In this document: positions 18,200-59,161 of the stretch, one piece after another
Layout of the letters: each line of letters starts with the position of its first letter
Position numbering within the stretch: the stretch's first letter is position 1
From: Zootoca vivipara
Lineage: Eukaryota
DNA: 64,000 nucleotides
NCBI RefSeq assembly: GCF_963506605.1
Contig: NC_083282.1
Location: forward strand, 69,130,001-69,194,000
Direction: 5' to 3'
Position numbers and translations under genes: made by a program
Notes under the pieces: model-generated
Told to the model about the DNA's origin: nothing
Database searches by the model: none
What the model saw: only the letters and a program-made list of their open reading frames with translations

Positions 18200-19030
18200 A
18201 TGTGCAAGGAGCCGGTACCCAGGCAGGGGAGGGTTGCTCACGCAGCACCATCCCCCGCTATGGGTGGGTGGGGAGAGGAGGCTGAGGAGTCAAATTTGGC
18301 TGCAGAGAAGTGGGGTCCCGATCCCCGGGGGCCGCTGGGCTGGGACGTTCAGAGGAGGCGAGGGATGGCTGCTGCGCCATCCAAATGGTGGTGCCAAATG
18401 CTTCTGGGGAAGGGGGGGAGGAGGAAGGGATGGCGCAGGAGGGGGGCGAGATGCGGGAAGATGCTTGCTTAGGACTTGTGGACGAAGGCTGGAGGCAGCG
18501 CAGGTGGATGGGAGGATGGAGCATGGAGTCATGGGCTGGTCGGATGGAGGGTGCAGGTAGGAGGCAGGCAGGCAGGCAGGCGGCGCGGCCTCTCGGCTCC
18601 CGCTCTCACCCGTGTCCTGCTCGGCCAGGAACGCGTCTTCCTCCTTCCTGGAGCGCAGGCAGCTCTCGGGGGCGCCGCCGCCGCCGCCTGGCTCCTCCTC
18701 GGGCAAGCGGGGAAAGCTGGTGATGCTCATGTAGTCGACGGGCGAGTAGGCGCCCAGGCTGCTCTGCTGACTCGCCTCCTTCTCCGAGGCACCAGCCGCA
18801 GACGACGCTGCAGACGCGGAGGCTGCTGATGCCGCCGCCATGCTGCCTGCCTGCTTGCCTGCGCCTCCCGGGCCGGGCAGCCGCCGCCTCCGAGCCAAGG
18901 ACCCCGTTCCGGAAGTGGCGGAAGGGAACCCGAGAGGGAGGAGGAGGAGGAGGAGGAGGGCGGGGCTTGGGGCCCAGGGACCGCCCACCTGAGCCAGGCG
19001 GACCGTCGCCCTGATGGCTGGTTTTCTCTT
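18200..19030 (-). promoter_or_regulatory. CpG island / GGT7 promoter with tandem ETS (CCGGAAGT) and GC boxes
   Basis: High GC and CpG density around the first exon; CCGGAAGTGGCGGAAG at 18909-18924. Confidence 0.75.
18610..18841 (-). CDS. GGT7: GGT7 coding exon 1 (MAAASAASASAASS...LGAYSPVDYMSITSFPRLPEEE...AFLAEQDT)
   Basis: The LGAYSPVDYMSITSFPRLPE motif is diagnostic for GGT7; ATG at 18841 and GTGAG donor at 18609; phase 1 matches exon 2. Confidence 0.96.
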
Positions 19031-20874
19031 TTCTATGCCGTTTAATACCGTAGATTGAAGAATATCTCCAAGTACCGGTAGTGTACAGGAAACCGAAGCA
19101 ACAACAGGCAACTTGAGCCAAATATTGCGAAAACGCGCAGTTGCATATAAAAATGAGGCATTAATACAAAATAATTTATCTATAATCTAATCTATATCTG
19201 TCTATCTGTCCACACACACACACACACACACAAGCCTCGCATAGAATGGGCCCCTTCCCAAGAAAAGCGGGTAAAACAAGTTTTGGTGAGCACAGGTGTG
19301 GCAAAGACCATAATTACAGGTGCAGGGATGCTGATACTGATGGTTAAGAAAGATTTTTATACCACTCAGTCATTACATTATTCTCAAATATACAGCTTTT
19401 TTTAAGGACAAGTAGAGCATACAGAAGATGATCAACCGCAAAACACAGAATAAAATTAGTAAAACGTTTAAAACAGGCATAGATAACTAAATTATATTTG
19501 CATTATTTAATAACATGTTAAGCCCACCTGTCATCAACAAGCAGACCCAAGGTAGGGGTAAAATAAAAATAAGATAAAAAATCATACATTTCCATCAAAT
19601 CATAGGAGAGAAATCATTTTATTTTATTTTGATAAATGTATTTGGATCGGAGTGCTTCAGAATGAAGGGTTTCGTTCATGCTATATAAATTACTGTACAT
19701 ATACTGTGACTGCAGAGCCGGCCCTACCAGCAGGCAGAGTGAGACCACCATCTCAGGCCATAGGTACTGGGTGGTGTGTGTGAGGGGGGTGGCGGCAACA
19801 TGTTAGAGGACAGAGCTGCATATACCATGCAGCCTGCCCTGTGCCCATCCTCAGGGATACCACTTGCTGAAAACCACAGGTGGGGCAAGTTGTGTTCATG
19901 TCCTACTTGCAAGCTTCCCACTGGCACCTTATTGGCCACTGTGAGAGCAGGATGCTGGACTAGGTGGGCCATTGGCCAGATCAATCAGGCTCTTATTATG
20001 CTCTTATGTTCTTATTAGCACTGTAATTGAGAATGTGCGCCCCATCCATCACTAATGACACAATAGTGTATCCCCATGGACCGGGTGAACTGAAATGTTT
20101 CAAGGAAAGCTTTTTAAGTATACTGTAATGGGCTGCCTACACAAGTAGCAGTTATATGGCAGAATTGTTCCTGGATTGTACCACTTTGAACTGCAGATGG
20201 GGGTGAGGAACTATCACATATCCGAGTGCTTCCCGGTTTTTAAAGGGTTACTTGACTGCTCCTGCTTGGGTCCTATATCTAGTCAAAACAGTTCTTTAAC
20301 TTCATTGATCAATTAATTAACTATAGAACAAAAAGAACTGCATGTCCCCACTGGTTCCCCCTAATACTAAACAAGTAGACAATAAAACAGTTCTGAGGTA
20401 TTAATCATATAATTACAAACATAGATGGGTTGATGTGTTATAAGAAAAATAATCTGGATTCTAGGTTTCTGTCACAGAAACTTTGGAGCATTTTCAAATG
20501 TAGGCACTTAAAATGCATTTGATATTTTGTAAAGTGCACAATATTTGTTTGTTTGTTTGTTTACATTTACTAGCTTGCCCTATCTCAGAGGCAGGATGAA
20601 ATGGATTTAAAATATGCATCTTAGCTGCCAAATTAAAACCAGCTAATGCAATGTCAAAAGGTAAAATTCCACACCAACTTAATGCCAGGCCTTAACTGCT
20701 TGCCCAATTAAAGGTTTTCCTTTTTTTAAAGGGCAACAACAAATGCCCCTGAATTTATTCTATAAGTTCTCCCAACTCTCTGGAGCACATTTGGGGAGAG
20801 TGTGAGGTACACATAGGGGGAGGAGAGTGGGAAAAACTTGTTGTACTAGCAGGAATCCTTGTGCTAATGGGATG

Positions 20875-23889: not shown

Positions 23890-24986
23890 TTCTTGATCAT
23901 AGAGAAGCTGCTGTCCCTGGCCAGAAATCTGAGCTGAAATCCTGCAGTTCAAAACTAAGCTCAGCAGCCAATCAACTGTTGTCTCTGTTTCCCAATTGTC
24001 AATGGGGAGAAGATATTGGTCAAATTTACAGAGTTGTTGTAGCAGATTATTGTAGGGGTGAGAAGCCTGAGACCATCCAGTTTGGTTGGACTAAAACACC
24101 CATCATTCCTGACCATTGCCTACACTGGTCAGAGTTGTGATCCAACAACATCTTCAGGACAACACAGGCGCTCTATCCCTGGGCTACTGAAATATTGTAT
24201 ATGACGTTTGAGCACTTAGGAAATGTGCTATAGAAATGCCAGGTCATTATAATATGTACAACTGCCTTGTTTAATTGACTAAGGCTGCATTCCTAAGCAT
24301 ACCTACTTACCTGGGAGTAAAGCCCAGTGAACCCAATGGAACTTAAAGTAGAAATGGCCTTTGACAGTTAAGGTACTTTGTTTTGGAGGACCCATCTATT
24401 TTGTTGAATCTATAATTGTTCTATTTTGGTAAGAATAGTTTGTGTTACTCTTTTTAAACAATTGCAACTGTCCTACATGTTTTATAGCTGTATATTGCAT
24501 TATTGGAACTCACCTAAGATAGTAAAGGGCAGGTAAGAAACGTTATAAATTATTGTAACTGATTAAAACATTTTTGATAAATTAAAATTATATTCTAAAT
24601 TAACTGGGCAAGAGATTATTCAAAAAATGATTTTAATATAAAAACTAGATTAAAAAGTGCCTTCCTAAAAGAGTCCAATTTTGTCCCACACAATAAAAAA
24701 TGGATCTAAGACAAAACTTGCAACACACTTGCATGATTTTAAAAAATGGAAAGTATTCATTCTCTTTCCAAACTACTGCTTTTACTTACCGTATATACAA
24801 CTGTATGCAAATCAAGTCAATTAGTCTGCTACTGTAATTAATGAACATGGATTTCTTCAGTTGAGCAACAGCCCTGGTCACACTATAAAACCCCACCAAC
24901 TATGACCTGAGTTTGTCTCTTGCAAGCCTCTGAGACAATCATCTCCTGTCCTGATTTTTTCATGTTTACAGGTTGTATTCGCTGCC

Positions 24987-25400
24987 ATGGATTTTGCTCC
25001 AGAGAAGAAAGAGGCCTTCATCATAACTCGAGAGATCTGTGCTGGCAGGAAGAAGATCCCCTTGGGGTCCATAGGATGCTTTGTGGAGGGCAAGCACAGC
25101 AAAGGTCGTCTGGTTGACATGAAGTCCAGGCCTATCATAGCCCTGATGAGCAGCCACATAAGACCTCTCAGCCGACACCAGGCTGCCCTGTTGCTCACCA
25201 TTGAGAGCCCACAAAAGAGGCATAGCCTGTTCTGCAATGAACAGCTCTTCTCTTCCATTTGCTGCCTGCGGATCCACGATGTGCTGCAACTAAGATATGG
25301 CAGAGTGGCGACTGTTGGTATTGTGAGAGGCTTCTGGGAACGGCGCAGGAAACCGGGCAGTGGAGAGCTGAGGATGGTCCTCATTGAGGTGGAGTTGCTG
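24987..25400 (+). CDS. CYLD-like coding exon 1 (N-terminal domain plus start of a degenerate CAP-Gly1)
   Basis: Kozak GCCATGG; [23 protein letters not shown] and IEVELL parallel CYLD KVPKGSIG, LLLAITNCEERFSLF and FGVELL; donor at 25401. Confidence 0.85.
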
Positions 25401-28400
25401 GTGAGGCCATAGCAGGGCTTAGCTTCAGGGTATTCTGGTACTGTACTGCTCCTGTTAATGGCCAAACTTTTAGTTGCTGTGGAGCGAAGCCTTCAAATTC
25501 CCCATTTTTCATCACAGGTCCTTCTCTGAATCCCCTAATCCTTTAGCCTCTTGATCTATGTATCTTTGCATCCCTTACTCTTTATCACCCCTTCTTAAAT
25601 ATATACTTTATGATACCCCCTATATGACCATTCTTAAATACATAAGGTACTACCTTCGGCAAATGGAATTGTCCCTAAAATAAACTGGTACTGCCATTGC
25701 AACAAGGAGTTTGGGAGGGGAAATATGGATCAGGGATGTGGTAGCTCCCACCAGCCCTACCCAGCATGGTCAGTGATCAAGAATGATGGGAGATGGTATG
25801 GATTATTGCTTCAAAAAAGCAGTATTCTCAACACCGATTATTATTTTCTTTGCTGCTTAAACCAGGATCCAGGAATTATTGCCCTTGGTAAAAACAACTC
25901 CAGGCTGAAAATCGATGCAAGCAAGATTGTCGCTGTTAGCTCCAGTATTACCAACCCCGTTTCATGCAAAGAGATTGGCCAAAGATCCCTTAAGAAAGGT
26001 AAGAGTTGGTGATGAAGTTGCAAGACCTCAGCCCCCTAAAATTACCAGTTTGTTTGCACAATATTCCTTATTAAAGAGATCTATGGTTTTGAGATTATTG
26101 TCCCCTAATTTCTTAGTTCTTGTGATATCCGGGAAGATCACAAACAAATGAGTTATGCTTTGTGCTTTGCAACCTAGGTGTGGCTGGTAGTGTGCTTGTG
26201 CGCCTGTAAGAGACATGCCTGTTATGTAATAGAAATGCCCTTCCCCTCTCTGGGTGTGGCTCCCAACATAACTCAGTGGGAATGAGATAGAAAGAACCTT
26301 GAGTCTTGCCTGGGCAGTGAGTCCTAGCTAGCTGCTGTTAAAAATAAATACAATTACTGAAGTTCTCCTGACCACCTGCTGACCTCCTACCACTTCCTGT
26401 CATTAGGGCAAACCCACTGCAAATTTTCTTTCCCAAACTTACAGGGCGAGAGCAAGCAGCAATACCATGTGATCTGAAAGGGACTTCACAGGATCTCTTC
26501 CAGTGTCACAGAGGGTGCTGGGATGCAACTCAACATCCGGCTACCCCACGCAATTGCTTGGATTGCTTGGCAGTTGGGCATAAAACACAGGGCAGCATTT
26601 CAAGGCATCATAGCCTTGCATCCTTGGGAGGGGCCTCACAGTCCTCAGTGATCTGAAATTCTGATCACAGGGAGGAGAGTAAGAATGTTCAAACTCTCCC
26701 TCTTGCAATCCCCTTTCAGGTTTCCCTGGGGGTCTGCAGGCCCTCAACGCTAAGGTTGCCATATTTCAAAAAGTAAAAATCAAGACACCCTGAAAATTGA
26801 TGAGCTTTTTTAGTTTACTTGCTGAAGATCCAGGACAAATCCCCCCCCCCCCCCGGGAGTCACTTCTGCCTTTGAAATCCCCGTAGTGTCCAGGAAAATC
26901 TGGACATATGGCAGCCCTACTCCATGTTGTAGTTGTGGGACTATAACTTCCGTCATCCCTGACCACTGATCATGCTGGCTGGAGCTGAGGGGAATTGGAG
27001 TTCAGCAGCAACATCTGGAGAGCCATGTGTCCTTGCTTTAGGTATTTTGGCTCTCGTGGTGAAGGTAGGGTTAATAACAGGACTATCATTTACCATACCC
27101 CAACTGTTCTTCTAGAGGGCAGTTACATAATGGAGCACTTGGCAGAGGATGAGGCAGCATGGGAACATGACGTCCTGCAGAAGATGGAAGGCAGCATGAA
27201 GGGCATCCAGGGGCATTGCAACTCCTGCTATCTAGACACTACCCTCTACAGGTTTGTTCAGTGTTTGGGGTCCAGCTCTGTGGTCTCTCCATCATTTCAC
27301 ACTGCCTCCTGCATTCAGCAATGCATTCAGCAAACCTTTCTCCCCTTTATTTTGCTGCCTTTTTCTGATCATAGCGCTTTGGTCTTTTTTGCAATCTTCA
27401 TGGTGCAGTCCTTCCTTCAAAATGGCCAGCTAGACCAGGAGTAGCCAACATGGGCCCTACAGGTGGACTCCACATTCGGAAGCTGTATGCCTCCAAATGC
27501 CAGTTGCTGGGAATGGCCGGTGTGTGTGTGTGTGTGTGAGTGAGTGCTGTTACGCTCATATCCTACTTTCGTGCTTCCCATGATGTCACACTGGAGAAGA
27601 GAATGTCGGACACATTGGCCTGATCCAACATGGTTCTTTTTAGGACTGCAATTTCCATCATCATCACCACTGACCATGCCTGATGGAGCTGGTGGAAGCT
27701 GTAGTTTAGCAGCATATGATGAGCTGCTACTCAATGACTGCTAGACAAAGCCAAAGTGGTACCCAGCCCTTGGAGGGCCAGTTCCATCAGCAGCTACCCT
27801 AGGAAGTAGCAGGCCATGGTACCCATTTTGCACAGGGGTGATGACCTCCCTTTCTATTTCAGTTCATGTGTTTTATGTGCATGTTTCTTTGCAGTTTGTT
27901 CAGCTTCTCCTCTGCCTTGGATGGCATCCTCTATTCATCTGAGGTGCGTGATGCAACAGTGCAGCAAATCTTGAGGCAGCAGATTGTGCAACCCTTGAGA
28001 CAGTGAGTTCCATTGTCTGTTCAAAGTGCTTGTACTCTGTGGTATTCATGTGCTCAGTGATGGACTATAATTTATTATAGGAATAAGGGAACTTTGGGCT
28101 GGACTTTTCATCCTGCCTAATTAAGCAGGTCAATAATAGAAAATACCATACTGTAGAGGGGCCAGATCCTGATCTCCCCACTCCCACAGACCATGTTGAC
28201 AGGTGAGCAGGCATTGGCTACACGATAGCATTTCAAGGATATCTCTAGTACGGGAGATCCTATCGAGGCTTGCTGTCACCACTGATAAGCCGATTGGCAC
28301 TGCAGCAAACCTCACTTGTCAAGTAACAATTGTGCCCTGGCCAGTGCACTTAAAGGCTCCCAACGGTTCTTTTGCAGCCATGTCTCTACCTGCCCTACAC

Positions 28401-31400
28401 CTGATGTCACCTGTTACATTTGGGGGCAATGACCTTCTGGGCCAAACTGGAACCTATGCCAGGCCTGATTTAGCCCACAGGCCAGAGGTTCCCCACTGCC
28501 GCCATATTTATTTTAGGAAATGCACAAAGAGCAAGAACTCTTTCCCCTGGCCAGTGAAAATTAGTATGCAGAGTGGTTGAAAGAACGGATCAAAATGTCT
28601 ACAGAAGTAATTATTGGTGCGATTACGACAGCTTCTCAAAGAGCAAATTGCTGGCCTGTGTTAATTAGTACAGAGCAGGGGGTTGGGAAATAATTCAGGT
28701 TAAACTCCAAGAGATGACATTGGAACAGCATGCCCACTTGCCCCACTGCTGCCGGAGAAGTAGCACTGGCATCAACGCTGACTTCTGGTGACATCTCACC
28801 AGAACTCGCTGCTGCTGCTTTGCACCACCGAGGCACAACCTAGGTGGGGGGTGCAGCAGGGGTGCAGCGCAATAGCAGCAGATGGGTAGGGCAGCACTTC
28901 CCATTTCCCCTCAAGCCGTGAAGCAGGATGCACCACCCCATCTTTCGATGTTGCTGCAGTATCACTCCTCTCACCCCTGACCAACAGCCATGATGAATTG
29001 CAGCTTCCACCAGCACCAGCCAACATCTGGACAGCCACATGTTCCCCACCCCTGCTTTATAGTGAAGTCGCACATTTCACTGCATTATATACATTTCATG
29101 GAATTCATAAAACACGTTGCTGTTAAGAGAAAAAAGAGCCATAACCTTATTCTTTTCAGGTAGCCCCTGAAGGAAATCTCCCTGTTATCATGCAAACACC
29201 AGCACATCTGTTTCCAGGTGCAGATTTTAAGGATCTTCTTTGCACCATTAAATGAACCGGCTTTTCAGCAAGGCGTGAGCTAATGTTCAGTGGCTCGCCT
29301 AGTATTTTCCCTTTATACTCTCCACTTCCCCCAAGTGATAGGAATTTGCAGGGCTGTCTATTACAAGGTCAGTTTCATGGAGAGAATGCAGGCTGTTTTG
29401 TATTGTAGTTGGTCAAAGAGACTAACCAACATATTTAGCTTTTTTTAATTAAAAAAATGTACTTATACACATTGAGCATGGGAAAGATATAGCAGGATTA
29501 ACCTTGAAACAGCCTCAGTTTCTGCCAAAGCAGCTGCATTCCTCTGCAGCTCCCTAGGGCTGTTTTTTTGCCAGGCAGTCCCAACAGCACACATTTCTTT
29601 CTCTGGCTAAAGACAAAATTGTGAGCAGGCAGGTGCAACCATCATTCCTAGATGATCTGGTTTGCCCATTAATGAACATCTATTGTAAGCAGGCAAGCAC
29701 ATAGCTCATGCAAGTATTGATCTTTCCCAGGCATGGCTATGTGGGAGCTGAGAATGTGATGAACTTGAGGAGGTTGCTGCGATGCGACAGCTTTGTTACA
29801 GAAGAGAAAGGTAAGGGACAATGGCATCATAGTCCATCCGCTGCACCTCTGGGGGCAAGGGAAGGTCACTTTGCCACTGCTTCCTTCCTTCCTCCCCTTA
29901 AAAACACACTCAGACACTTTGAAATATCTGGAATTTGTCCACAAATGAAGAGTGTGCCGATTAGGAGTATAGTTCTGGGCATTGCTGCAGGCCTTTTACT
30001 ATCCTAATGGAGACTACTGTTGACAGATCCAGAGGAGTTTCTGAATGTCCTTCTCAGAGAGGTCTTGGCTGTAGAACCCTTGCTCAAAATCAGGTATGGC
30101 TTTGATCTGTTTATCTTTTTTTATCTTGGCTCTGAGGGCCAGTCACCAGGGCAGTATTATCTACCATGTGACTAGGGATGCCAACTCTTGGATTCATAAA
30201 ATCTGGTGATTAGGCAGAGCCTAGGATTGGAGCCCATTTCAGTGCAGCAATGGGTGTGGGTGGGAGCCTAGCTGTGTCATATGGGCAGACGGCATTGAGT
30301 TGAGATAGGTTGGGAGGTGAAGCATAACAGTTTTTCAGTAGGAAGGAGCCCAACACAAAAGCTGTTAATTTGCCTAAGCTTCAAAACTTCTTCCCCCAAA
30401 ATTTTTAGGTCAGACAACGAAGTGCTAGAATATAATTGCTACCAGATCCTTGCAGAGAAAGATGCTACAATCAAAGTGCCCACTGTGCAGCAGCTACTGG
30501 AAACATCCCTGCTCTCATATGGCTTAAAGCTGGATGAGGTATGCAACTGTCTTTAAGTAGCACTGTGTATATTTCAAGATTAGACCTCAACAACAACCAA
30601 GAATGGTCTATTCAGGAGCAGTTCTATTTGGACCACTCCATCTTGAGCCAACTTACAGCAAAACACATACAAACACTCTTCAAAAAGGTCCGTTTCTTCC
30701 AGATTCCATCATGCCTCATCTTACAGATGCCTAGGTTTGGGAAGAGTTATAAGAAGTTTTCATCAGTGTATCCCTCTCTCGAGCTTGACCTCACAGATAT
30801 GATGGAGCAAGGTAAATCAAAGATTTGATACTGGTTGGGTTTGATGTTACTAAGAACTGATTGAAGACTACAGTACTGTACAAACCTGGGTTCTTTTTCT
30901 ATGATTGTAGCTCCACGGGTGTGTTGTGTTTGTGGAGGAGAGGCAGCCCACGGATGCTCACGATGCCAACTGGATTCCCTTCTGCATCCTAAACTCATGA
31001 AACTGTTTGAGAACCTTTCTAAGGTATGAAGGAACAATGAATGATAATTATTTCATGATAGAAAAGCCAGTGGGAGGGTTCTGTAATGACATTGGAAAGA
31101 GTTGCTAGCAGGTAGCCAAATGGTCCATGTCAACAATGAGACTTTGTCCTTAGGTTTTTTATTAAATTTTCCTAACTTTACCAATTAATTTCAAATTTGC
31201 TACACATTTGTTACAATTTGACTTTCCACCTTTCCTTCCATGCTTTTTTACACCCATCCCTTCCACCTACTGCATACGGTAATATCACACATTTCATCTA
31301 ATACATAGTCCTATATTTCATATACAGTCATACCTCGGTTTAAGTACGCCTCAGTTTGAGTATTTTCAGTTTAAGTACTCCGCGGACCCGTCTGGAACAG

Positions 31401-31978
31401 ATTAATCAACTTTCCATTACTTTCAATGGGAAAGTTTGCTTCAGTTTAAGTACGCTTCAGGTTAAGTACAGACTTCCGGAACCAATTGTGTTTGTAAACC
31501 GAGGTACCACTGTATTATCATTTTCTTCCTGTTGCTCAAATTTCAAATCCGGCACACAATTTCATTTGGTCATCATATTTTTTCAAATTATCCAGAAAGG
31601 CTCCCACTCTTTCATAAATTGTCCATCATATTGATCTTTTACTTTCACTTCTAGCTTTGCCAGTACCGCTTAGTAACTGTGAGCCTCTGTCTTCATCTTC
31701 AGGGATTTATTGCTACAGCTTCTTGCACACTTAGGTGTGGAGTTACCCACCCACCAGGCAAGCAAGCAAAAATTAGGCTTGCCAGCTTTGGCACAATTTC
31801 AACAAACAATATTCTCCTTGTAGGTAGAGATGTGCATAGTTTTCTCTGCTGCATTTCTGCTGGTTGTGCAGCTGTAAAAGGCACAGCACCCTCCCTGGAA
31901 ATGTTCGTTAATTTGCCTCAAGGACATTTCCTTCAGAACTCTGTAACCTGCATATTCTCCTTCCTCCTCCATAACACG

Positions 31979-32011
<33 letters not shown>

Positions 32012-34419
32012 TATTATTTATACCCTGCCCGTCTGGCCGGGTTCCCCCAGTCACTCTGGGCGGCTTCCAACAAAATATTAAAATACAGAAATCCATCAAA
32101 CATTAAAAGCTTCCCTAAACAGGGCTGCCTTGAGATGTCTTTTAAGGTCTGGTAATTGTTGCTCTATTTGACCTCTGGTGGGAGGGCATTCCACAGGGTG
32201 GGTGCCACTACCGAGAAGGTCCTCTGCCTGGTTCCCTGTAACTTGGCTTCTCGTAGCGAGGGAACTGCCAGAAGGCCCTCGGCGCTGGACCTGTGTCTGG
32301 GCAGAATGATGGGGGAGGAGACGCTCCTTCAGGTATACTGGACCGAGGCCATTTAGGGCTTTAAAGGTCAGCACTAACACTTTGAATTGTGCTCGGAAAC
32401 GTACTGGGAGCCAATGTAGGTCTTTCAGGATCGGTGTTATGTGGTCACGGCGGCCGCTCCCAGTCACCAGTCTAGCTGCCACATTCTGAGTTAGTTGTAG
32501 TTTCCAGGTCACCTTCAAAGGTAGCCCCACATAGAGCGCATTGCAGTAGTCCAAGCGGGAGATAACTAGAGCATGCACCACTCTGGCGAGACAGTCCGCG
32601 GGCAGGTAGGGTCTCAGCCTGCGTACCAGATGGAGCTGATACACAGCTGCCCTGGATACAGAATTGACCTGCGCCTCCATGGACATCTGTGAGTCCAAAA
32701 TGACTCCCAGGCTGCACACCTGGTCCTTCAGGGGCACAGTTACCCCATTCAGGACCAGGGAATCCTCCACACCTGCCCGCCTCCTGTCCCCCACAAACAG
32801 TACTTCTGTCTTGTCGGGATTCAATCTCAATCTGTTAGCCGCCACCCATCCTCCAGCCGCCTCCAGGCACTCACATAGAACCTTCACCGCCTTCCCTAGT
32901 TCTGATTTGATAACTTGTATTCTAGGAAACAACACATTCTCCCTATTGGGAAACCCAAAAGTATGTCCCAACTGGTTAGCCTTCCAGAATCCTCTTTGCA
33001 CAATAAACATTCCAGGTACCTTAGGCAATTTCTTGGCCAAGATTTCTGGTTAGAGTGAAAAACCAGCTACACAAATGGCACAGTCTGTCAGCTAGGGGGT
33101 TTATATTATTATTAATTCATTTACAAATTTGCCTTTTACTTTTTTATGTCTCAAGGCTATTTACACAGACATGGCTAAAATGGTTTTTAAAACAGTACAA
33201 AGAAACCTGAAAATAGGTTTCAAAGCAACTCAAAGTGAACATCTGAAGCAGCGAGGTCTTTACATGCAGCTGGAGAAGCCTGTCAAAACAAAAATGTCTT
33301 CAATTGTTTCTGGAAAATTCAGGTGGTGGCCTCCTGCTGTAGCTCAACAGGTTTGCAAAGAACCACCCTACATCGCTGGACTGCACTGAAGGGTGACACA
33401 GTCAAAGTGTGACGCCCAAGAAATAGAGCATTATAATCACTACTTTAAGATGCGGGGAAACTCCGAAAAACAGTGTCAGATTCTGACTAGCAATCATCTG
33501 TTTCTTTCATCCAGCCACCATCTCATTGGATTGGACCAAAGCATCCTTACAAAGGACTAGGACCCAACAGCCCTCCAAAGCAGCGCACCTTGGATCTCTT
33601 CGCCGTCCTTTGCATAGAAAGCAGCCATTATGTGGCTTTTGTTAGATACGGCCCATTGAGACACTCCTGGCTTTTCTTCGACAGCATGGCTGGCAGCACA
33701 CTGAGTAAGCAAGGATCTTGGGCTTTATTTGTGGGGGTTAGTCTAAAAACCAGAGCTCTGCAAGCTTCAACACGTGTTTCCAAGGTTTTCTCTCCCTTTC
33801 CCATTGGTTCTTACTTCCTGCCTATTTTCACTTAGACATGGCTTCCTTCAGCGCTGCTGAATCCTGGCAACAAATATAATTACTGTCTTGCTCTTCACAA
33901 GCTCACAGAATGCATAACTACAGGCATTCCCCCCCCCCTTACCCAGGGGTTACGTTTTGGGCCCCTGTGAGCATAAGTGGAATTGCGTAAAGTGGGGAGG
34001 GGCACCCTCTAAAAAGGCTCTAAATGCCCATTTCCCACCTGCTCTCCAGCTCTCTCTCCACATACAACTCTCTCTCCACCTAGAGGTGAAGTTCTGGGGC
34101 CAGCTGGAGGACGCACAGAAAAGCAGCAGCAACATGCAGCAGCTGCGCTACCCCAACCGTCAGCTGTTAGGTGAGGAGGCTTGAGCAGCTTAAACAAAGC
34201 TCTGCTGTGCCTCCAGCCCCTTTAGGGCTCCCTCTGTCCTCACTGATGTCTTTTTTGGGCTCTGGGGAGGGTCTCCTCGTGAATCACAAGGACTCTTCAG
34301 CTCTCTTTCGCCATTTCCTGGTATGATTCTATAAGTAAAAAATGGAGGTGCTATATGTACTTTTCCATGTTTATTTGTTTGTTTTGCAACACAACACAAT
34401 CTCTACTAAAAACTAATAA

Positions 34420-34459
<40 letters not shown>

Positions 34460-34717
34460 GAATTATCTTTAGTTGCCTCTTTTTAAACTGTCCGTTTTTC
34501 TTTAGAGAATGACAAAGGAATTAACATTCCTGTGGTCAAGGCCTGCCCTCAGATTGGAGACTATCTGGCTATGGCACCCGAGGAATTTGCTACTGTGGAT
34601 ACCAAGCAGATGGATGCTTTTTCCAGAAGATTTTTCTGCGATGCTTACACGTTCATGTACCAAAAGCCACAGCACGCTTCTTACAAGTTATCGGTTCAGA
34701 AACTGAGCTCTCTCTGA
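24987..34717 (+). CDS. CYLD-like ubiquitin carboxyl-terminal hydrolase (USP family), 11 coding exons, ~563 aa: join(24987-25400,25866-25998,27116-27251,27895-28002,29731-29810,30027-30093,30409-30538,30703-30811,30911-31023,33515-33704,34506-34717)
   Basis: All introns are GT-AG with matching phases; total 1692 nt open to TGA. Motifs [59 protein letters not shown] and CDAYTFMYQ are CYLD-specific. A divergent paralog rather than CYLD itself. Confidence 0.92.
25866..25998 (+). CDS. CYLD-like coding exon 2 ([24 protein letters not shown]...SLKK)
   Basis: Pyrimidine tract plus CAG acceptor and GTAAGA donor; phase 0 to 1 bridges the flanking exons; homology is weak. Confidence 0.65.
27116..27251 (+). 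CDS. CYLD-like exon with Cys box ([17 protein letters not shown]); catalytic Cys at 27226-27228
   Basis: Aligns to CYLD KGIQGHYNSCYLDSTLF. Confidence 0.93.
27895..28002 (+). CDS. CYLD-like exon ([35 protein letters not shown])
   Basis: Aligns to CYLD LFAFSSVLDTVLL...LLRTEIVNPLR; AG/GTGAGT boundaries. Confidence 0.9.
29731..29810 (+). CDS. CYLD-like exon ([26 protein letters not shown])
   Basis: Aligns to CYLD YGYVCATKIMKLRKIL...GFTSEEK. Confidence 0.9.
30027..30093 (+). CDS. CYLD-like exon ([23 protein letters not shown])
   Basis: Aligns to [27 protein letters not shown]. Confidence 0.92.
30409..30538 (+). CDS. CYLD-like exon ([43 protein letters not shown])
   Basis: Aligns to CYLD YQIFMEK..VPTIQQLLEWSF..LKFAE. 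Confidence 0.92.
30703..30811 (+). CDS. CYLD-like exon ([36 protein letters not shown])
   Basis: Aligns to CYLD [36 protein letters not shown]. Confidence 0.93.
30911..31023 (+). CDS. CYLD-like B-box exon ([38 protein letters not shown])
   Basis: Aligns to CYLD [34 protein letters not shown]. Confidence 0.88.
31325..31512. mobile_element. Tc1/mariner (Tigger-like) MITE within a decayed L1-like fragment
   Basis: TIRs cagtcatacctcggttt / aaaccgaggtaccactg with TA flanks. Confidence 0.85.
31980..32905 (-). mobile_element. L2-clade LINE 3' fragment (RT C-terminus), ending in (TTA)n
   Basis: ORF 32096..33040 contains [18 protein letters not shown] and [14 protein letters not shown], typical of L2 RT; frameshifted near its end. 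Confidence 0.92.
33515..33704 (+). CDS. CYLD-like exon with His box; catalytic His at 33626-33628 and Asp at 33680-33682
   Basis: [34 protein letters not shown] aligns to [33 protein letters not shown]. Confidence 0.93.
34506..34717 (+). CDS. CYLD-like terminal coding exon ([20 protein letters not shown]...[26 protein letters not shown])
   Basis: Aligns to CYLD NIPQVTPCPEVGEYL...CDAYMCMYQSPTMSLYK. Confidence 0.93.
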
Positions 34718-49436: not shown

Positions 49437-51214
49437 GTAAGCGCCCTTCCTTGGATTTCCTTTGTTCCGTGAGGACGGGGCTGGTGGGTGGTCAAGACCA
49501 GGTTAGGGGCGAGAATGCGGGATAACTTGCTGCATATGACCCAGCCACTCATTAATCCGAAGTAACTAGTCCCTGTTGTCTTTGCTGCGGCAAAAGTAAC
49601 TAGTCCCTGTTGTTTTTCGTTGTAAGAAACTAGCTGGCCTCCCCTGGAAATTTACTGCCTACTGGTTTCAAGACGCATGAGGTGTATTAGGAATAGTGAC
49701 TCTAGGAAAGGAAGGTTTCTGGATATTTATTTCAGCCTTCCCCAAGCTGGTGCCCCCCGGAGATGTTTTGGACTACAACCCCCAGCAGCCCCGTTGCCCT
49801 ACTTGCATGGGAGCTGTAACCCAATGCATCAGCAGTGCTCCTGGTTGAGGAAGTTTGATTTCCTTATTGTTCAAGGCAGCATACACAGTCCTCGCCCTCC
49901 ATTACACCACTGCAACCCTCCAGTCGATTATGTTAAGCTGGGAAAGACAGAGGAGATGGGAGGAGAAACAGGTCCTGAGCCACACAGTGAGCATCATGGC
50001 TGAGTGGGGATTTGATCTTGAGTTTCCGCAGCACAGGTTCAACACTTTAACCACTGCACCCCACTGTCTCTTAGTGGTCAGGTGGGACCCACTTTTGACA
50101 CTCCTTAAGCACTTTTCCTTGAGTATAGCAGTGTTGTCCCCCAATGCAGAGCCCTCCTGATGCTGCGGGCTACAATTCTTTCAGCTCCAAACAACTGGGA
50201 AGAAGTTTACCCAAGAAGTGCACAAGCTGTGGGATGTGATGTGACCATCTCTTGATTTTTTGAAAGGTTTCCCTAACTTCCAGCATACCCCCCCCACACA
50301 CACACACATACACACTGGGCAGGAGAACAGGGCAATGTCTTGTAGGCTGTCTGTTCACCTTCTCAATACAAGAAATCCGGAGTTAGAGCATCCCCAAAAC
50401 ATAGCTCCCCATCCTCTGCAAGCGACAAGCGTCCCCACATACCCAAACAAGGAAAAATGTGTTTCAGAGAAAGAAATGCCAGCTGATACTGGAACAAGTG
50501 TGGGTCAAGTGCACTGGGGTTGCACAACGACCCATTTGCTCGTCTCCAGAATCTGTCATCCAGCCTAGCAGCAGGAAGCCTCACCGCTCAGTGACAGAGC
50601 AACTGCTTGGCCTGCAGAAGGTTGCAGGTTCAGTTCCCTGCAGTTCCCTGCAGTTGCCAGTCAGTGTAGCTCTGCTGCCAGTCAGCAGTCAGTACTGAGT
50701 TACATGGACCAGTGGTCTGGCTTGCTATGTTCTAGTGATCAGCGCAGTCAGTGTTTCACGTTGAACTGATGATATACCTGACATTAAACAAATAATCTTC
50801 TAGCGGAGGGCACCCTTAAAAGAGTCCCCAGGTACACCCCTGGAAGACCTCATCACTAGTCCTCCCCTAAGTGTAGAATCTTGGCTGGCTGTGAGGGGTA
50901 TCTGCTTACTCATGCACTCCGCACATGCTCAGAAGGGCCCTTTTTATTACTACTTTGCATGTTCGGAAGTTGAGAGAGACACTGAAAAGCAGTTCCAGGG
51001 CTGATGCCCGGGAGCAACTGAGCTCTGTCGACAGTGATCTGTGCGGTCCACACAGCTGGCTTTGTGGGTCTGGAGCAGAAATGAAATGGCTCTCTTCTGG
51101 TCTCTACCCCATCCTCCCATTGCAGGCCAAACAAAAAGCAAGGAAAGACATTGACCTGAAGAATTATGACACACCACTGCCATACTATGAGGTTTTCTCT
51201 GTCCATCATCAGAG

Positions 51215-51460
51215 GGGAAGGGCCATAGCTCAGTGGCAGAACATCCGCTCTGCATGCACAAGGTTCCAGGTTCAATCCCTGGCATTGCCAGGTAGGGGTG
51301 GGAGAGACTCCTGCCTTGCCGGGGGTTGAGCTCGATGACCCTTGGGGTCTCTTCCAACTCTATGATTCTGTGACTCCTTGTCTGAAACCCTGCAGGCTTG
51401 CTGCGAGTCAGTTTTGAGCTAGATGGACTAATGGTATGACTCAGAAAAAGGCTCTTCCTA
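51215..51460 (+). mobile_element. tRNA-derived SINE (Squam3-like) with an embedded CR1-like tail fragment
   Basis: A box TAGCTCAGTGG and B box GGTTCAATCCC; CR1-like gatgaccc..ttccaactctatgattct at ~51320-51372. Confidence 0.65.
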
Positions 51461-51521
51461 TCTGGGTAGGTAGCAGCGAAGGGGGCATTTACTGAATGAA
51501 TGCATACAGCAAACATGGGAT

Positions 51522-51522
<1 letters not shown>

Positions 51523-55053: not shown

Positions 55054-55532
55054 CCACAAAGGACTGCATTGCACAGAAAGGAGCATCGGGCCTATACTAA
55101 GACTCTGACCAAGCATCACTTTACACCAGGAAGGGATTTACACACACGCACACGCACACACACACTGCTAAGTGGAACTGGACAAAAGCAGACCTGAATT
55201 TAGTTAGCCATGGCAGTTTCTGGAGAGGGAAGGAAATTGTTGTGTCATGCCTTCCAGATACTGACTAAGCTTGAGAGCAGGGCTGGCCCTACCATTAGGC
55301 AGAGTGAGGCAACTGCCTCAGCCAGCAAATGCTTGGGGAAGGAGGCAGTAGCCTCTTGGCTGTTTCTTCTGAGCCCCCTGGCCAAAACCCCATGCCTGCA
55401 CCCACTGCCCTTAACTGGCTTCCTGCCAGTATTAATATAATATTCAATTGCTGTTCCAGCCTGCATGTGGACTGGGGGTGCCATCTTGGGGGTGCCCCAG
55501 CAGCAAAATGTGCCTTGAAGCAGTCCTGCTTG

Positions 55533-55674
55533 AGAATTATAGAATTATAGAGTTGGAAGGGATCACAAGGATTATCCAACCCCCTGCAGTGCAGGAATCG
55601 TTCGCCCAATGTGGGACTTGAACCCACAACCCTGGGATTAAGAGGCTCATGCTCTACCAATTGAACTATCCCAG
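55533..55674 (-). mobile_element. tRNA-Lys(CTT)-headed SINE with CR1-like tail
   Basis: Reverse complement reads GGTAGAGCATGAGCCTCTTAATCCCAGGGTTGTGGGTTCAAGTCCCACATTGGGCG, then attcctgcactgcagggggttgg..ccttccaactctataattct. Confidence 0.8.
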
Positions 55675-55839
55675 GAATGGAGCAAACTAATCCAAGCCCT
55701 GAGTGGAGATTCCCAGTACCTCCAGCTAAGGTTAGGAACGTGACCTGCCTGAAACCCTGGATAGCCGTTGCAAGTCAGTGTGTAGACAATATTCAGTTAA
55801 ATGTTGCCAGTGGTCTGCCTATGTTCCTGTGAGGTCGAA

Positions 55840-57173: not shown

Positions 57174-57524
57174 GTTGTTGTTTAGTCGTTTAGTCGTGTC
57201 CGACTCTTCGTGACCCCATGGACCAGAGCACGCCAGGCACTCCTGTCTTCCACTGCCTCCCGCAGTTTGGTCAAACTCATGTTCGTAGCTTCGAGAACAC
57301 TGTCCAACCATCTCGTCCTCTGTCGTCCCCTTCTCCTAGTGCCCTCCATCTTTCCCAACATCAGGGTCTTTTCCAGGGAGTCTTCTCTTCTCATGAGGTG
57401 GCCAAAGTATTGGAGCCTCAGCTTCACGATCTGTCCTTCCAGTGAGCACTCAGGGCTGATTTCCTTCAGAATGGATAGGTTTGATCTTCTTGCAGTCCAT
57501 GGGACTCTCAAGAGTCTCCTCCAG
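57174..57524 (-). mobile_element. BovB (RTE) 3' fragment
   Basis: ORF 57182..57511 is the intact BovB C-terminus; 34-bp TSD at 57140-57173 / 57525-57558. Confidence 0.95.
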
Positions 57525-57543
57525 CATCATCCCCATCCCACCA

Positions 57544-57664
57544 AAGGCAGCCCTGTTTAGGGAAGGTTTTTTATGTTTAATGCTGTATTGTGTTTTTAAT
57601 ATTTGGTTGGGAGCCGTCCAGAGTGGCTGGGAAACCCAGCCAGATGGGCAGGGTGTAAATAAAC

Positions 57665-58879: not shown

Positions 58880-59161
<282 letters not shown>

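What the first reader, a model, noticed from the sequence alone, without database searches (positions are those of the whole stretch)
24987..34717. Intact compact CYLD paralog: a ~563-aa deubiquitinase lacking CAP-Gly2/3 and the central regulatory region
Seen: 11 GT-AG exons splice into a 1692-nt open frame with the catalytic Cys (NSCY), His (SSHY) and Asp (FDSM) all preserved. Known: human CYLD is a single-copy, 956-aa K63/M1 deubiquitinase with three CAP-Gly domains, a TRAF2-binding site and a phospho-serine cluster. Here only ~180 residues precede the USP-domain exon. Inference: this is an active second CYLD-family enzyme, uncoupled from the usual NEMO/TRAF2/IKK regulation and with no human equivalent. 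It is likely annotated at best as 'CYLD-like' and is probably uncharacterised.
Basis: partly seen in the sequence, partly recalled or inferred. Interest (0 to 1): 0.85.

Follow-up and report, generated by a model that had tools for sequence, protein, structure and literature searches.

The report
Lizard CYLD-like deubiquitinase gene, already annotated
This is a real, intact second CYLD-type deubiquitinase gene of a lacertid lizard, but it is already in RefSeq and belongs to the published "CYLD-like" duplicate that mammals lost, so the gene is ordinary and only its function is unstudied.

Summary
Eleven GT-AG exons (24987-34717, + strand) join into a 1692-nt open frame of 563 aa with the Cys, His and Asp boxes intact.

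The product is 100% identical to RefSeq XP_034979597.2 of Zootoca vivipara, so the gene is already annotated with these exons.

It is a true paralog. Zootoca also has a canonical CYLD on another contig, with CAP-Gly and phospho-site domains. A tree of 43 USP domains splits CYLD from CYLD-like, and both clades run from sharks to squamates. Vlasschaert et al. 2017 described this duplicate as CYLDL, deleted in mammals. Zebrafish cyldb, by length and species, appears to be its ortholog.

Details added here:
- Fish CYLDL keeps one CAP-Gly domain; amphibian and squamate CYLDL have none.
- Squamates have lost the conserved B-box zinc ligands C817 and C820, and H827 and H833 vary.
- The position of human Leu622, needed for SPATA2 binding, is Tyr.
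- The USP core is still under purifying selection within squamates (Fisher p = 5e-11).

Spliced contigs confirm six junctions. The junctions 2>3 and 7>8 were not seen; unproductive forms were seen instead.

dN/dS could not be computed. Enzyme activity is inferred, not shown.

The parts
24987..25400 (+). Exon 1: start codon and 138 aa of the N-terminal domain. An AG acceptor lies 15 nt upstream of the ATG, so a 5' UTR exon probably lies further upstream.
   Evidence: phmmer finds CYLD-like proteins. The start Met is conserved in squamate orthologs.
25866..25998 (+). Exon 2: end of the N-terminal domain and a short linker.
   Evidence: The junction 25400>25866 is seen in a spliced contig of run X1.
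27116..27251 (+). Exon 3: start of the USP domain, with the Cys box [12 protein letters not shown] (Cys220).
   Evidence: 2VHF, E 8e-5. The model junction 25998>27116 was not seen in the reads.
26445..27115 (+). Alternative 5' extension of exon 3. A transcript contig joins exon 2 to an acceptor at 26445 and reads through to 27251. In frame it hits a stop after 69 codons.
   Evidence: joint 25996>26443, cut +2; record 1 of X1; translation.
27895..28002 (+). Exon 4: USP domain. It holds Tyr at the position of human Leu622.
   Evidence: Junctions 27251>27895 and 28002>29731 are seen.
29731..29810 (+). Exon 5: USP domain.
30027..30093 (+). Exon 6: USP domain (DPEEFLN...). It is skipped in one contig (joint 29810>30409), which shifts the frame.
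30409..30538 (+). Exon 7: USP domain.
   Evidence: (junction 30093>30409 seen).
30539..30702 (+). Intron 7. It is retained in an X1 contig (30407-30809 in one piece) and covered by X20 RNA reads. The spliced junction 30538>30703 was not seen. Retention gives a stop after 5 codons.
   Evidence: table 8 record 6; table 2 bins 30360-30759; sequence.
30703..30811 (+). Exon 8: USP domain (QMPRFGK; R758 and F766 equivalents kept).
   Evidence: Junction 30811>30911 is seen.
30911..31023 (+). Exon 9: B-box remnant. The four Cys equivalent to C788, C791, C799 and C802 are kept. The positions of C817 and C820 are Glu and Ser.
33515..33704 (+). Exon 10: end of the B-box remnant, the His box (SSHY, His468) and the Asp (FDSM, Asp486).
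   Evidence: 3WXF/2VHF, E 3e-12. The junction was not tested; it lies outside the 6-kb stretch that was laid.
34506..34717 (+). Exon 11: C-terminal USP part and the stop codon. One extra T at about 34688-34689 shifts the last codons. Zootoca ends ...[11 protein letters not shown], while Lacerta ends ...YK-YRFRN.
   Evidence: 3WXF, E 9e-15; alignment. The other frame reads SYRFRN* (ORF 34509..34706).

Best explanation
The stretch is the CYLD-like gene (CYLDL; RefSeq XP_034979597) of the common lizard Zootoca vivipara or a near-identical lacertid. It is the old vertebrate duplicate (ohnolog) of the tumour suppressor CYLD. Sharks, bony fishes, lungfish, amphibians and squamates kept it; mammals lost it.

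It encodes a 563-aa protein with two parts:
- a conserved N-terminal module of two small SH3/Tudor-like barrels (about residues 10-165), distantly related to the CYLD N-terminus and the first half of CAP-Gly1;
- a CYLD-type USP cysteine-protease domain with Cys220, His468 and Asp486 in place.

Shown: gene structure, identity, paralogy, domain content, splicing at six junctions, and purifying selection on the USP core.

Inferred:
- It is a working deubiquitinase, probably for Lys63/Met1 chains as in CYLD.
- It works without the CAP-Gly ubiquitin, NEMO and microtubule binders, the Ser418/Ser568 phospho-switches and the TRAF2 site.
- Half of the B-box zinc ligands are no longer conserved and the Leu622 position is Tyr. 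It is therefore probably monomeric and not coupled to SPATA2-LUBAC.
- The N-terminal module would then be what targets it.
For: Structure and frame.

Identity: the model is 100% identical to P0143, XP_034979597.2, named 'CYLD [Zootoca vivipara]' (version 1 'CYLD-like'). It is 94-95% identical to Lacerta and Podarcis 'CYLD-like' proteins.

USP homology: single exons hit CYLD USP structures 2VHF and 3WXE-G. Pfam finds UCH only in tetrapod orthologs, and UCH plus one CAP_GLY in fish and lungfish.

Paralogy:
- Zootoca canonical CYLD is P0197, with PF00443, PF01302 and PF16607, on another contig.
- In the IQ-TREE of 43 USP domains the CYLD clade has support 100/100 and the CYLDL clade 100/98. Both span sharks to squamates.

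Literature: CYLDL is a WGD duplicate deleted in mammals (PMC5381560). cyldb is an extra zebrafish DUB (PMC2809080; PMC8201528).

Constraint:
- Among 8 squamates, only 17 of 94 columns that are invariant in all other CYLD and CYLDL vary, against 140 of 245 other columns (odds ratio 0.17, p = 4.6e-11).
- The frame is intact in all the full-length squamate models compared (8 species, from geckos to iguanians and lacertids).

Catalytic triad, Leu622>Tyr and B-box ligands.

Roles of the B-box and Leu622 in dimerisation and SPATA2 binding: PMC5031558. Roles of CAP-Gly3 and Ser568: PMC8511506.

Transcripts: GT-AG joints 1>2, 3>4, 4>5, 5>6, 6>7 and 8>9 appear in contigs of run X1.

N-terminal module: pLDDT 82-94 in the AlphaFold2 model; hhalign to CYLD residues 15-173.
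Against: No enzyme assay exists, and I found no functional study.

Transcripts:
- The junctions 2>3 and 7>8 were not seen. The assembled forms instead use an acceptor at 26445 (stop after 69 codons), retain intron 7, or skip exon 6.
- Three raw RNA-seq runs of the species gave only a few unspliced reads, at about 6% of each run read.

Rate of change: the squamate stem branch is long (0.54 changes per site), while the canonical USP domain is identical among three lizard families.

Other signs of loosened constraint:
- The B-box has lost constraint.
- Zootoca carries a 1-nt insertion that rewrites the last five codons.
- CAP-Gly3 is needed for full activity of human CYLD (PMC8511506), so a protein without it may be a weak enzyme.

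Model quality: the USP part of the AlphaFold2 model is poor (pLDDT mostly below 60).

dN/dS was not computed.
Confidence: 0.85

Rival explanations
1. The gene is sliding towards loss in squamates, or has become a non-catalytic scaffold. It is still open by inertia, but poorly spliced, fast-evolving and of little function.
For: - The squamate stem branch is long (0.54) and within-squamate divergence is high, while the canonical CYLD USP is unchanged.
- B-box zinc ligands C817, C820, H827 and H833 are not conserved.
- A 1-nt insertion sits in the last codons in Zootoca.
- Transcript contigs carry premature stops, and the 2>3 and 7>8 junctions were not seen.
- Three RNA-seq runs were nearly empty.
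- Of 7 coding differences between individuals, 3 are non-synonymous.
Against: - The frame is open in every full-length squamate model examined, from geckos to iguanians and lacertids. Their divergence is roughly 200 My by general knowledge.
- The catalytic Cys and His and most core motifs are invariant, and the Asp is nearly so.
- Substitutions within squamates avoid the conserved core (p = 4.6e-11). Neutral decay would not do that.
- The N-terminal module is well conserved and confidently folded.
- Contigs drop rare variants, so unseen junctions are not evidence of absence.
Confidence: 0.12
2. It is the species' only CYLD gene: a shortened or misassembled canonical CYLD rather than a paralog.
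For: NCBI now names the protein simply 'CYLD' (XP_034979597.2).
Against: - A separate canonical CYLD of Zootoca (P0197, 897 aa, with CAP_GLY and CYLD_phos_site) lies on another contig.
- The two proteins fall in different, fully supported clades.
- They differ by signature indels in the USP domain.
- The neighbours here are GGT-like and MYL9-like. By my recollection these are human 20q genes, not the 16q CYLD neighbourhood.
Confidence: 0.01

Closest known systems
RefSeq XP_034979597.2 / .1, 'ubiquitin carboxyl-terminal hydrolase CYLD(-like)' of Zootoca vivipara, and the lacertid orthologs XP_033009211.1 (Lacerta agilis) and XP_028591609.2 (Podarcis muralis)
   Same: XP_034979597.2 is identical over all 563 residues. 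Lacerta and Podarcis are 94-95% identical and align without exon-sized gaps.
   Different: Nothing for the Zootoca entry. The other lacertids end in YRFRN or YWFRN instead of LSVQKLSSL, and have 561 aa.
CYLDL, the WGD duplicate of CYLD (Vlasschaert et al. 2017, PMC5381560); zebrafish cyldb; fish, shark and lungfish 'CYLD-like' proteins of about 670-750 aa
   Same: Same clade in the tree (100/98). Same N-terminal module (hhalign E 2.5e-33). Same USP domain, without the canonical 5-aa and 4-aa inserts.
   Different: The fish forms keep one CAP-Gly domain (PF01302, E about 1e-14) and a longer linker, plus a full eight-ligand B-box. The lizard protein has neither.
Amphibian CYLD-like proteins (about 537-572 aa, e.g. 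Microcaecilia XP_030069130.1)
   Same: Same compact layout: N-terminal module plus USP, no CAP-Gly. About 46-50% identity over the full length.
   Different: Amphibians keep all eight B-box Cys/His ligands. Squamates have lost C817 and C820 and vary at H827 and H833.
Canonical CYLD (human 956 aa; structures 2VHF, 3WXE-G, 1WHL, 1WHM, 1IXD)
   Same: - CYLD-type USP fold and catalytic triad.
- 46-49% identity over the USP domain.
- R758 and F766 equivalents are kept.
- A distantly related N-terminus.

   Different: - No Pfam CAP-Gly domain, and no phospho-site region (PF16607).
- The linker that carries Ser568 is not conserved.
- No stretch matching the central region that carries the TRAF2-binding site.
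- Leu622 is Tyr.
- Half of the B-box ligands are gone.
- It evolves far faster.

Membership tests
CYLD-type USP deubiquitinases (peptidase family C19, CYLD subfamily) | Catalytic Cys box, His box and Asp at the positions of C601, H871 and D889 | tested here: met
   NSCY (C220), SSHY (H468) and FDSM (D486) align with C601, H871 and D889 of a 956-aa rodent CYLD. Across 40 CYLDL proteins, C220 and H468 are invariant and D486 nearly so.
CYLD-type USP deubiquitinases (peptidase family C19, CYLD subfamily) | Best sequence and fold matches are CYLD USP structures | tested here: met
   Single exons hit 2VHF and 3WXE-G at E 9e-15 to 8e-5. Foldseek on the model of P0143 gives 3WXE and 2VHF at E about 1e-16, although the USP part of the model is of low confidence.
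CYLD-type USP deubiquitinases (peptidase family C19, CYLD subfamily) | Deubiquitinase activity with Lys63/Met1 preference | not testable with these tools
   Needs a recombinant enzyme assay.
CYLDL (CYLD-like ohnolog clade) | Groups with shark-to-amphibian CYLD-like proteins, apart from canonical CYLD, while a canonical CYLD exists in the same species | tested here: met
   CYLDL clade 100/98 and CYLD clade 100/100. Zootoca canonical CYLD is P0197.
CYLDL (CYLD-like ohnolog clade) | Lacks the canonical USP inserts (5 aa near 'DVEYY', 4 aa near 'KVEA') | tested here: met
   Alignments.
Canonical CYLD | Three CAP-Gly domains (PF01302) | tested here: not met
   No PF01302 hit in exons or in P0042, P0048, P0050, P0002 or P0025. 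No CAP-Gly exon in the window.
Canonical CYLD | Phospho-site region (PF16607), with the TRAF2-binding site, between CAP-Gly2 and CAP-Gly3 | tested here: not met
   PF16607 is precomputed for canonical CYLDs only. It is absent from the CYLDL rows. Residues 138-505 of Zootoca CYLD find nothing in the window.
Canonical CYLD | Leu622 surface needed for SPATA2 binding (PMC5031558) | tested here: not met
   The position is Tyr in lacertids and iguanians, Asp in Paroedura, and His, Arg or Asn in other CYLDL.
B-box zinc finger (as inserted in the CYLD USP domain) | Eight conserved Cys/His zinc ligands (C788, C791, C799, C802, C817, C820, H825/827, H833) | tested here: not met
   The first four Cys are invariant. 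C817 is Glu, Arg or Gly; C820 is Ser or Ala; H827 and H833 vary among squamates. Assigning these residues as zinc ligands rests on their invariance and on my knowledge of B-boxes.
CAP-Gly domain (for the N-terminal module) | Pfam PF01302 match with the glycine-rich loop | tested here: not met
   There is no Pfam hit. The loop region after 'VELL' is shortened in all CYLDL.
CAP-Gly domain (for the N-terminal module) | CAP-Gly/SH3-like fold homologous to CYLD CAP-Gly1 | tested here: inconclusive
   hhalign places residues 4-143 on CYLD 15-173 (E 1.6e-4, probability 50%). VIA-align gives 1WHL Z 5.7, no better than generic Tudor/SH3 barrels at Z 6-7.4.

The most novel reading that the evidence does not exclude
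Tetrapod CYLDL, and the squamate form most of all, may be a stripped-down, constitutively active CYLD-type enzyme. It would be monomeric, free of SPATA2-LUBAC, NEMO, TRAF2 and IKK control, and directed by its conserved two-barrel N-terminal module to substrates that canonical CYLD does not handle. It would then be a natural separation-of-function variant of CYLD, showing what the bare USP core does in vivo.
Probability: 0.3. Interest if true: 0.45.

Novelty: already known. Interest (0 to 1): 0.22.

Why it matters
As a gene it is not news. It is in RefSeq, and its family is in the literature as the CYLD duplicate that mammals lost.

What could matter is biochemical. CYLD is a much-studied tumour suppressor and immune regulator, and its activity depends on its CAP-Gly domains, phospho-switches, B-box dimer and SPATA2. 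Non-mammalian vertebrates carry a sister enzyme that shed these parts in steps: one CAP-Gly left in fishes, none in amphibians and squamates, and a decayed B-box in squamates. That series is a ready-made deletion experiment on the CYLD scaffold, and nobody seems to have assayed any member of it.

For genome annotation there is a second point. NCBI names many CYLDL proteins plainly 'CYLD', which invites false orthology calls.

Tried and rejected
- **Pfam on single exons:** only sub-threshold noise, because the pieces are too short.
- **PDB sequence search with exon 1:** nothing.
- **The search for homologous proteins with residues 425-563 of P0143:** only 20 hits and no canonical CYLD, because the word prefilter is too strict. 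The same idea with a shark CYLDL C-terminus worked.
- **A CAP-Gly relic in intron 2:** the alternative exon at 26445 reads '...DLFQCHRGC...', which recalls the CAP-Gly 'LFQC' motif. I tested whether it is a relic of the lost CAP-Gly exon. tblastn with the middle parts of fish CYLDL and canonical CYLD found nothing there at E <= 0.1. Rejected as chance.
No ortholog DNA could be fetched, no codon-based dN/dS was computed, and synteny could not be compared in other lizards.
- **AlphaFold2 with a 40-row alignment** modelled the USP domain poorly. I drew no structural conclusion about the B-box remnant.
- **Fold searches for the N-terminal module** gave only generic SH3/Tudor-like matches.
- **Raw RNA-seq runs X20-X22** were almost empty over the gene.
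- **The search of earlier findings** by 'CAP-Gly' and by place gave nothing useful.
- **The joined spliced model:** database search tools received only exon references or database protein ids. The joined frame was built only inside the sandbox from window.fa, to check the frame and to compare it with proteins already fetched.
Full report
**1. The observation**

The + strand between 24987 and 34717 holds eleven exons. Each is bounded by an AG acceptor and a GT donor.

Joined inside the sandbox, they give 1692 nt, that is 563 codons and a stop with no internal stop. My first pass used an in-frame acceptor at 33581 and gave 1626 nt.

The motifs NSCY, SSHY and FDSM are present. About 182 residues (exons 1-2) precede the exon that opens the USP domain.

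**2. How the searches were run**

PDB, Pfam and the representative library therefore received only exon references.

The joined frame was computed only inside the sandbox, to verify the frame and to compare it with proteins already fetched. That comparison showed identity to a database protein, and from then on that protein's id (P0143) was used.

**3. What the exons are**

- Exons 3, 10 and 11 hit the solved USP domains of human CYLD (2VHF) and zebrafish CYLD (3WXE-G), with E from 8e-5 to 9e-15.
- Exons 4 and 9 align weakly but without ambiguity to the same chains.
- Exon 1 (138 aa), searched with phmmer over 1.8 billion representatives, found only 14 proteins. Among them are a 553-aa caecilian 'CYLD-like' protein (43% identity), a gecko fragment and fish proteins of about 720 aa.

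**4. The gene is already annotated**

A search with the caecilian protein listed 'CYLD-like' proteins in three size groups:

| Group | Length |
|---|---|
| Amphibians | about 537-572 aa |
| Squamates | about 550-580 aa |
| Sharks, rays, chimaera, lungfish, ray-finned fishes | about 670-750 aa |

The cluster around the Podarcis hit contains XP_034979597.2, 'ubiquitin carboxyl-terminal hydrolase CYLD [Zootoca vivipara]', of 563 aa. Version 1 of that entry was named 'CYLD-like'.

The joined model is identical to it at all 563 positions. It is 94-95% identical to the Lacerta agilis and Podarcis proteins. The window is therefore from Zootoca vivipara or something indistinguishable from it, and RefSeq already holds this exact gene model.

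**5. It is a paralog, not the only CYLD**

A search with the C-terminal 98 residues of a shark CYLD-like protein brought in canonical CYLDs. One is 'CYLD isoform X3 [Zootoca vivipara]' (P0197, 897 aa). It carries PF00443, PF01302 and PF16607 and lies on a different contig.

I built a maximum-likelihood tree of 43 USP domains (IQ-TREE, LG+C20+F+G4).

- It gives a canonical CYLD clade (100/100), a CYLD-like clade (100/98) and a small teleost third clade.
- The two large clades each contain cartilaginous fishes, ray-finned fishes, lungfish, amphibians and squamates.
- Within the CYLD-like clade the order follows the species tree, so the split predates jawed vertebrates.

This agrees with Vlasschaert et al. 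2017 (PMC5381560). They call the gene CYLD-like or CYLDL, class it among the whole-genome-duplication pairs, and state that it was deleted in all mammals. Zebrafish lists have carried cyldb as an extra DUB since 2009 (PMC2809080; PMC8201528).

The neighbours fit a non-CYLD locus:

- a gamma-glutamyltransferase-like gene on the minus strand upstream (weak Pfam hit; its first exon looks like GGT7 to me, from memory);
- an exon 64 residues long that matches myosin light chain 9 at E 4e-38 downstream.

By my own knowledge both are human 20q genes, and 20q is paralogous to the 16q region that holds CYLD. An earlier first-reader note on this window (s1-855459) says the same. I checked only the two gene identities.

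**6. Domain content**

- Pfam finds UCH alone in three squamate and two amphibian orthologs. It finds UCH plus a single CAP_GLY (E about 1e-14) in lungfish, shark and a Danio species.
- tblastn of canonical CYLD and fish CYLDL against the whole window finds only the eleven exons. Residues 138-505 of Zootoca CYLD, and the CAP-Gly and linker part of fish CYLDL, match nothing (at looser settings).
- So the tetrapod form lost the last CAP-Gly domain, which aligns with CAP-Gly3 of CYLD, and its linker. Amphibians and squamates share this layout, so the loss is probably old. Independent losses are not excluded.

The N-terminal 180 residues are conserved:

- The profile of tetrapod CYLDL matches that of fish CYLDL at E 2.5e-33.
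- It matches residues 15-173 of canonical CYLD only at E 1.6e-4. It stops where the glycine loop of CAP-Gly1 would begin, and that loop is shortened in all CYLDL.
- AlphaFold2 models residues 10-165 with pLDDT 82-94 as two small beta-barrels joined by helices.
- Fold searches give generic SH3/Tudor-like matches (Z 6-7.4). CYLD CAP-Gly1 (1WHL) reaches only Z 5.7.

**7. The USP domain in detail**

Using a 956-aa rodent CYLD as a ruler, I confirmed that its C601, H871, D889 and L622 sit at the published human positions. The lizard protein compares as follows.

- It keeps the catalytic triad and the RFGK...F segment (R758, F766).
- It lacks the two short canonical inserts.
- It has Tyr where human CYLD has Leu622. 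Leu622 is essential for SPATA2 binding (PMC5031558). This position is not Leu in any CYLDL examined.

In the B-box, the first four Cys (788, 791, 799, 802) are invariant in all 40 CYLDL aligned. In squamates the later ligand positions are not conserved, while amphibian and fish CYLDL keep all eight:

| Canonical residue | In the eight squamates |
|---|---|
| C817 | Glu, Arg or Gly |
| C820 | Ser or Ala |
| H827 | His, Gln or Pro |
| H833 | His, Tyr or Cys |

In human CYLD the B-box makes the dimer that stabilises the SPATA2 complex, and it is dispensable for catalysis. My inference is that the lizard enzyme is probably monomeric and not tied to SPATA2-LUBAC. This is an inference from residues, not a result.

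**8. Is it under selection?**

No dN/dS was computed. I used protein-level tests instead.

- The frame is intact in every full-length squamate model examined, from geckos to iguanians and lacertids.
- Among eight squamates, columns that are invariant in all 31 non-squamate CYLD and CYLDL sequences vary in 17 of 94 cases. Other columns vary in 140 of 245 cases (odds ratio 0.17, Fisher p = 4.6e-11).
- Six of the 17 exceptions lie in the B-box.

That pattern shows continued purifying selection on the catalytic core and relaxation in the B-box.

The gene nevertheless evolves fast. The squamate stem is 0.54 changes per site, whereas the canonical USP domain is identical in Zootoca, Eublepharis and Varanus.

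Seven coding differences between the window and reads or contigs of other individuals split 4 synonymous to 3 non-synonymous. That is too few to say anything.

**9. Transcripts**

One read-laying run was allowed, on 24960-30959.

Contigs of run X1 come from the same species label. The kind of library is only guessed, but the contigs carry GT-AG joints, so they derive from spliced RNA. They show:

- The model's junctions 1>2, 3>4, 4>5, 5>6, 6>7 and 8>9.
- Instead of 2>3, a 1412-nt contig that joins exon 2 to an acceptor at 26445 and runs on through exon 3. In frame this hits a stop after 69 codons.
- One contig that skips exon 6, which shifts the frame.
- Another contig that retains intron 7. 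A few raw RNA reads of X20 also cover that intron.

Junctions 9>10 and 10>11 lay outside the stretch. They are supported only by the ortholog alignment.

Three raw RNA-seq runs, with about 6% of each read, gave almost nothing over the gene apart from a 36-nt repeat.

Contigs keep only dominant paths, so the unseen junctions are not evidence of absence. Even so, the productive isoform is not directly demonstrated here.

**10. A small lineage-specific change**

Zootoca has one extra T at about 34688-34689. The other frame reads ...SYRFRN*, which is how Lacerta ends. Zootoca instead ends ...[11 protein letters not shown]. The change lies beyond the end of the canonical CYLD sequence and probably has no effect. 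Both RefSeq versions carry it.

**11. Verdict**

The gene is already annotated, and its family and evolutionary origin are published. Novelty: already known.

- the stepwise loss of accessory modules (three CAP-Gly in CYLD, one in fish CYLDL, none in tetrapod CYLDL);
- the squamate-specific decay of the B-box;
- the absence of the SPATA2-contact leucine;
- a protein-level test showing that the catalytic core is still constrained.

My estimates:

| Claim | Probability |
|---|---|
| It is the intact CYLDL gene | about 0.97 |
| It makes an active deubiquitinase | about 0.7 |
| It acts independently of SPATA2, NEMO and TRAF2 | about 0.6 |

Interest is low to modest (0.22). It would rise only if the enzyme were assayed and shown to do something canonical CYLD does not.

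Noticed in passing
window 85-441 (-), 6854-7171 (-), 18293-19111 (-): A gamma-glutamyltransferase-like gene lies on the minus strand upstream of CYLDL. One exon gives a weak Pfam G_glu_transpept hit (E 2e-4, below the cut-off). The GC-rich ORF at 18.3-19.1 kb looks like a GGT7 first exon ('...GAYSPVDYMSITSFPRLPEE...'); that identification is from memory only.
   Followed up: partly
window 58880-59161 (+): An exon encodes the N-terminal 64 residues of a myosin regulatory light chain. The best match is myosin light chain 9 (E 3.6e-38), with an EF-hand by Pfam.
   Followed up: yes
window 42800-44100: A GC-rich, CpG-island-like stretch (GC 0.52) has long open frames on both strands and no Pfam match. 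It is probably the promoter and first exon of an unidentified neighbouring gene.
   Followed up: partly
window 32096-33040 (-): A 314-aa open frame inside intron 9 of CYLDL looks like the C-terminal part of a LINE reverse transcriptase. It has no Pfam hit at E 0.01. It is a transposon insertion, not part of the gene.
   Followed up: partly
window 26754-26789: RNA reads of all three raw runs pile up on a 36-nt piece and have unrelated sequence on both sides. This is a short repeat or conserved motif expressed elsewhere in the genome, inside intron 2 and the alternative exon.
   Followed up: no
window 11059-11469 (-) and 57186-57557 (+); also 50953-51522 (-), 55298-55774 (-): The first two ORFs share near-identical stretches ('...RVFSKDSSLLMRWPKYWSLSFTICPSSEHSGLIS...RMDRFDLLAVHGTLKSLLQ...'), so they are copies of a dispersed repeat. 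The other two carry tRNA-like SINE motifs. None is a gene.
   Followed up: no
proteins P0161, P0168 (Oreochromis), P0040 (Coryphaenoides): A third CYLD-family clade exists in teleosts (100/100 in the tree). UniProt names the tilapia member 'Cylindromatosis (turban tumor syndrome), like'. So the label 'cyldl' in fish databases may not mean the same gene as the CYLDL of Vlasschaert et al. P0040 is a fused model of two tandem copies.
   Followed up: partly
protein names: NCBI names many CYLDL proteins plainly 'CYLD'. Examples are Zootoca XP_034979597.2, Anolis carolinensis XP_062834881.1, many sharks and teleosts, and Xenopus laevis. Name-based orthology will mix the two genes.
   Followed up: no
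one search hit list: No bird, turtle, crocodilian or mammalian CYLDL appeared among the best 120 of 2024 hits, while at least nine squamate species and about 20 amphibians did. This hints at loss in those lineages too. Absence from a capped list proves nothing.
   Followed up: no
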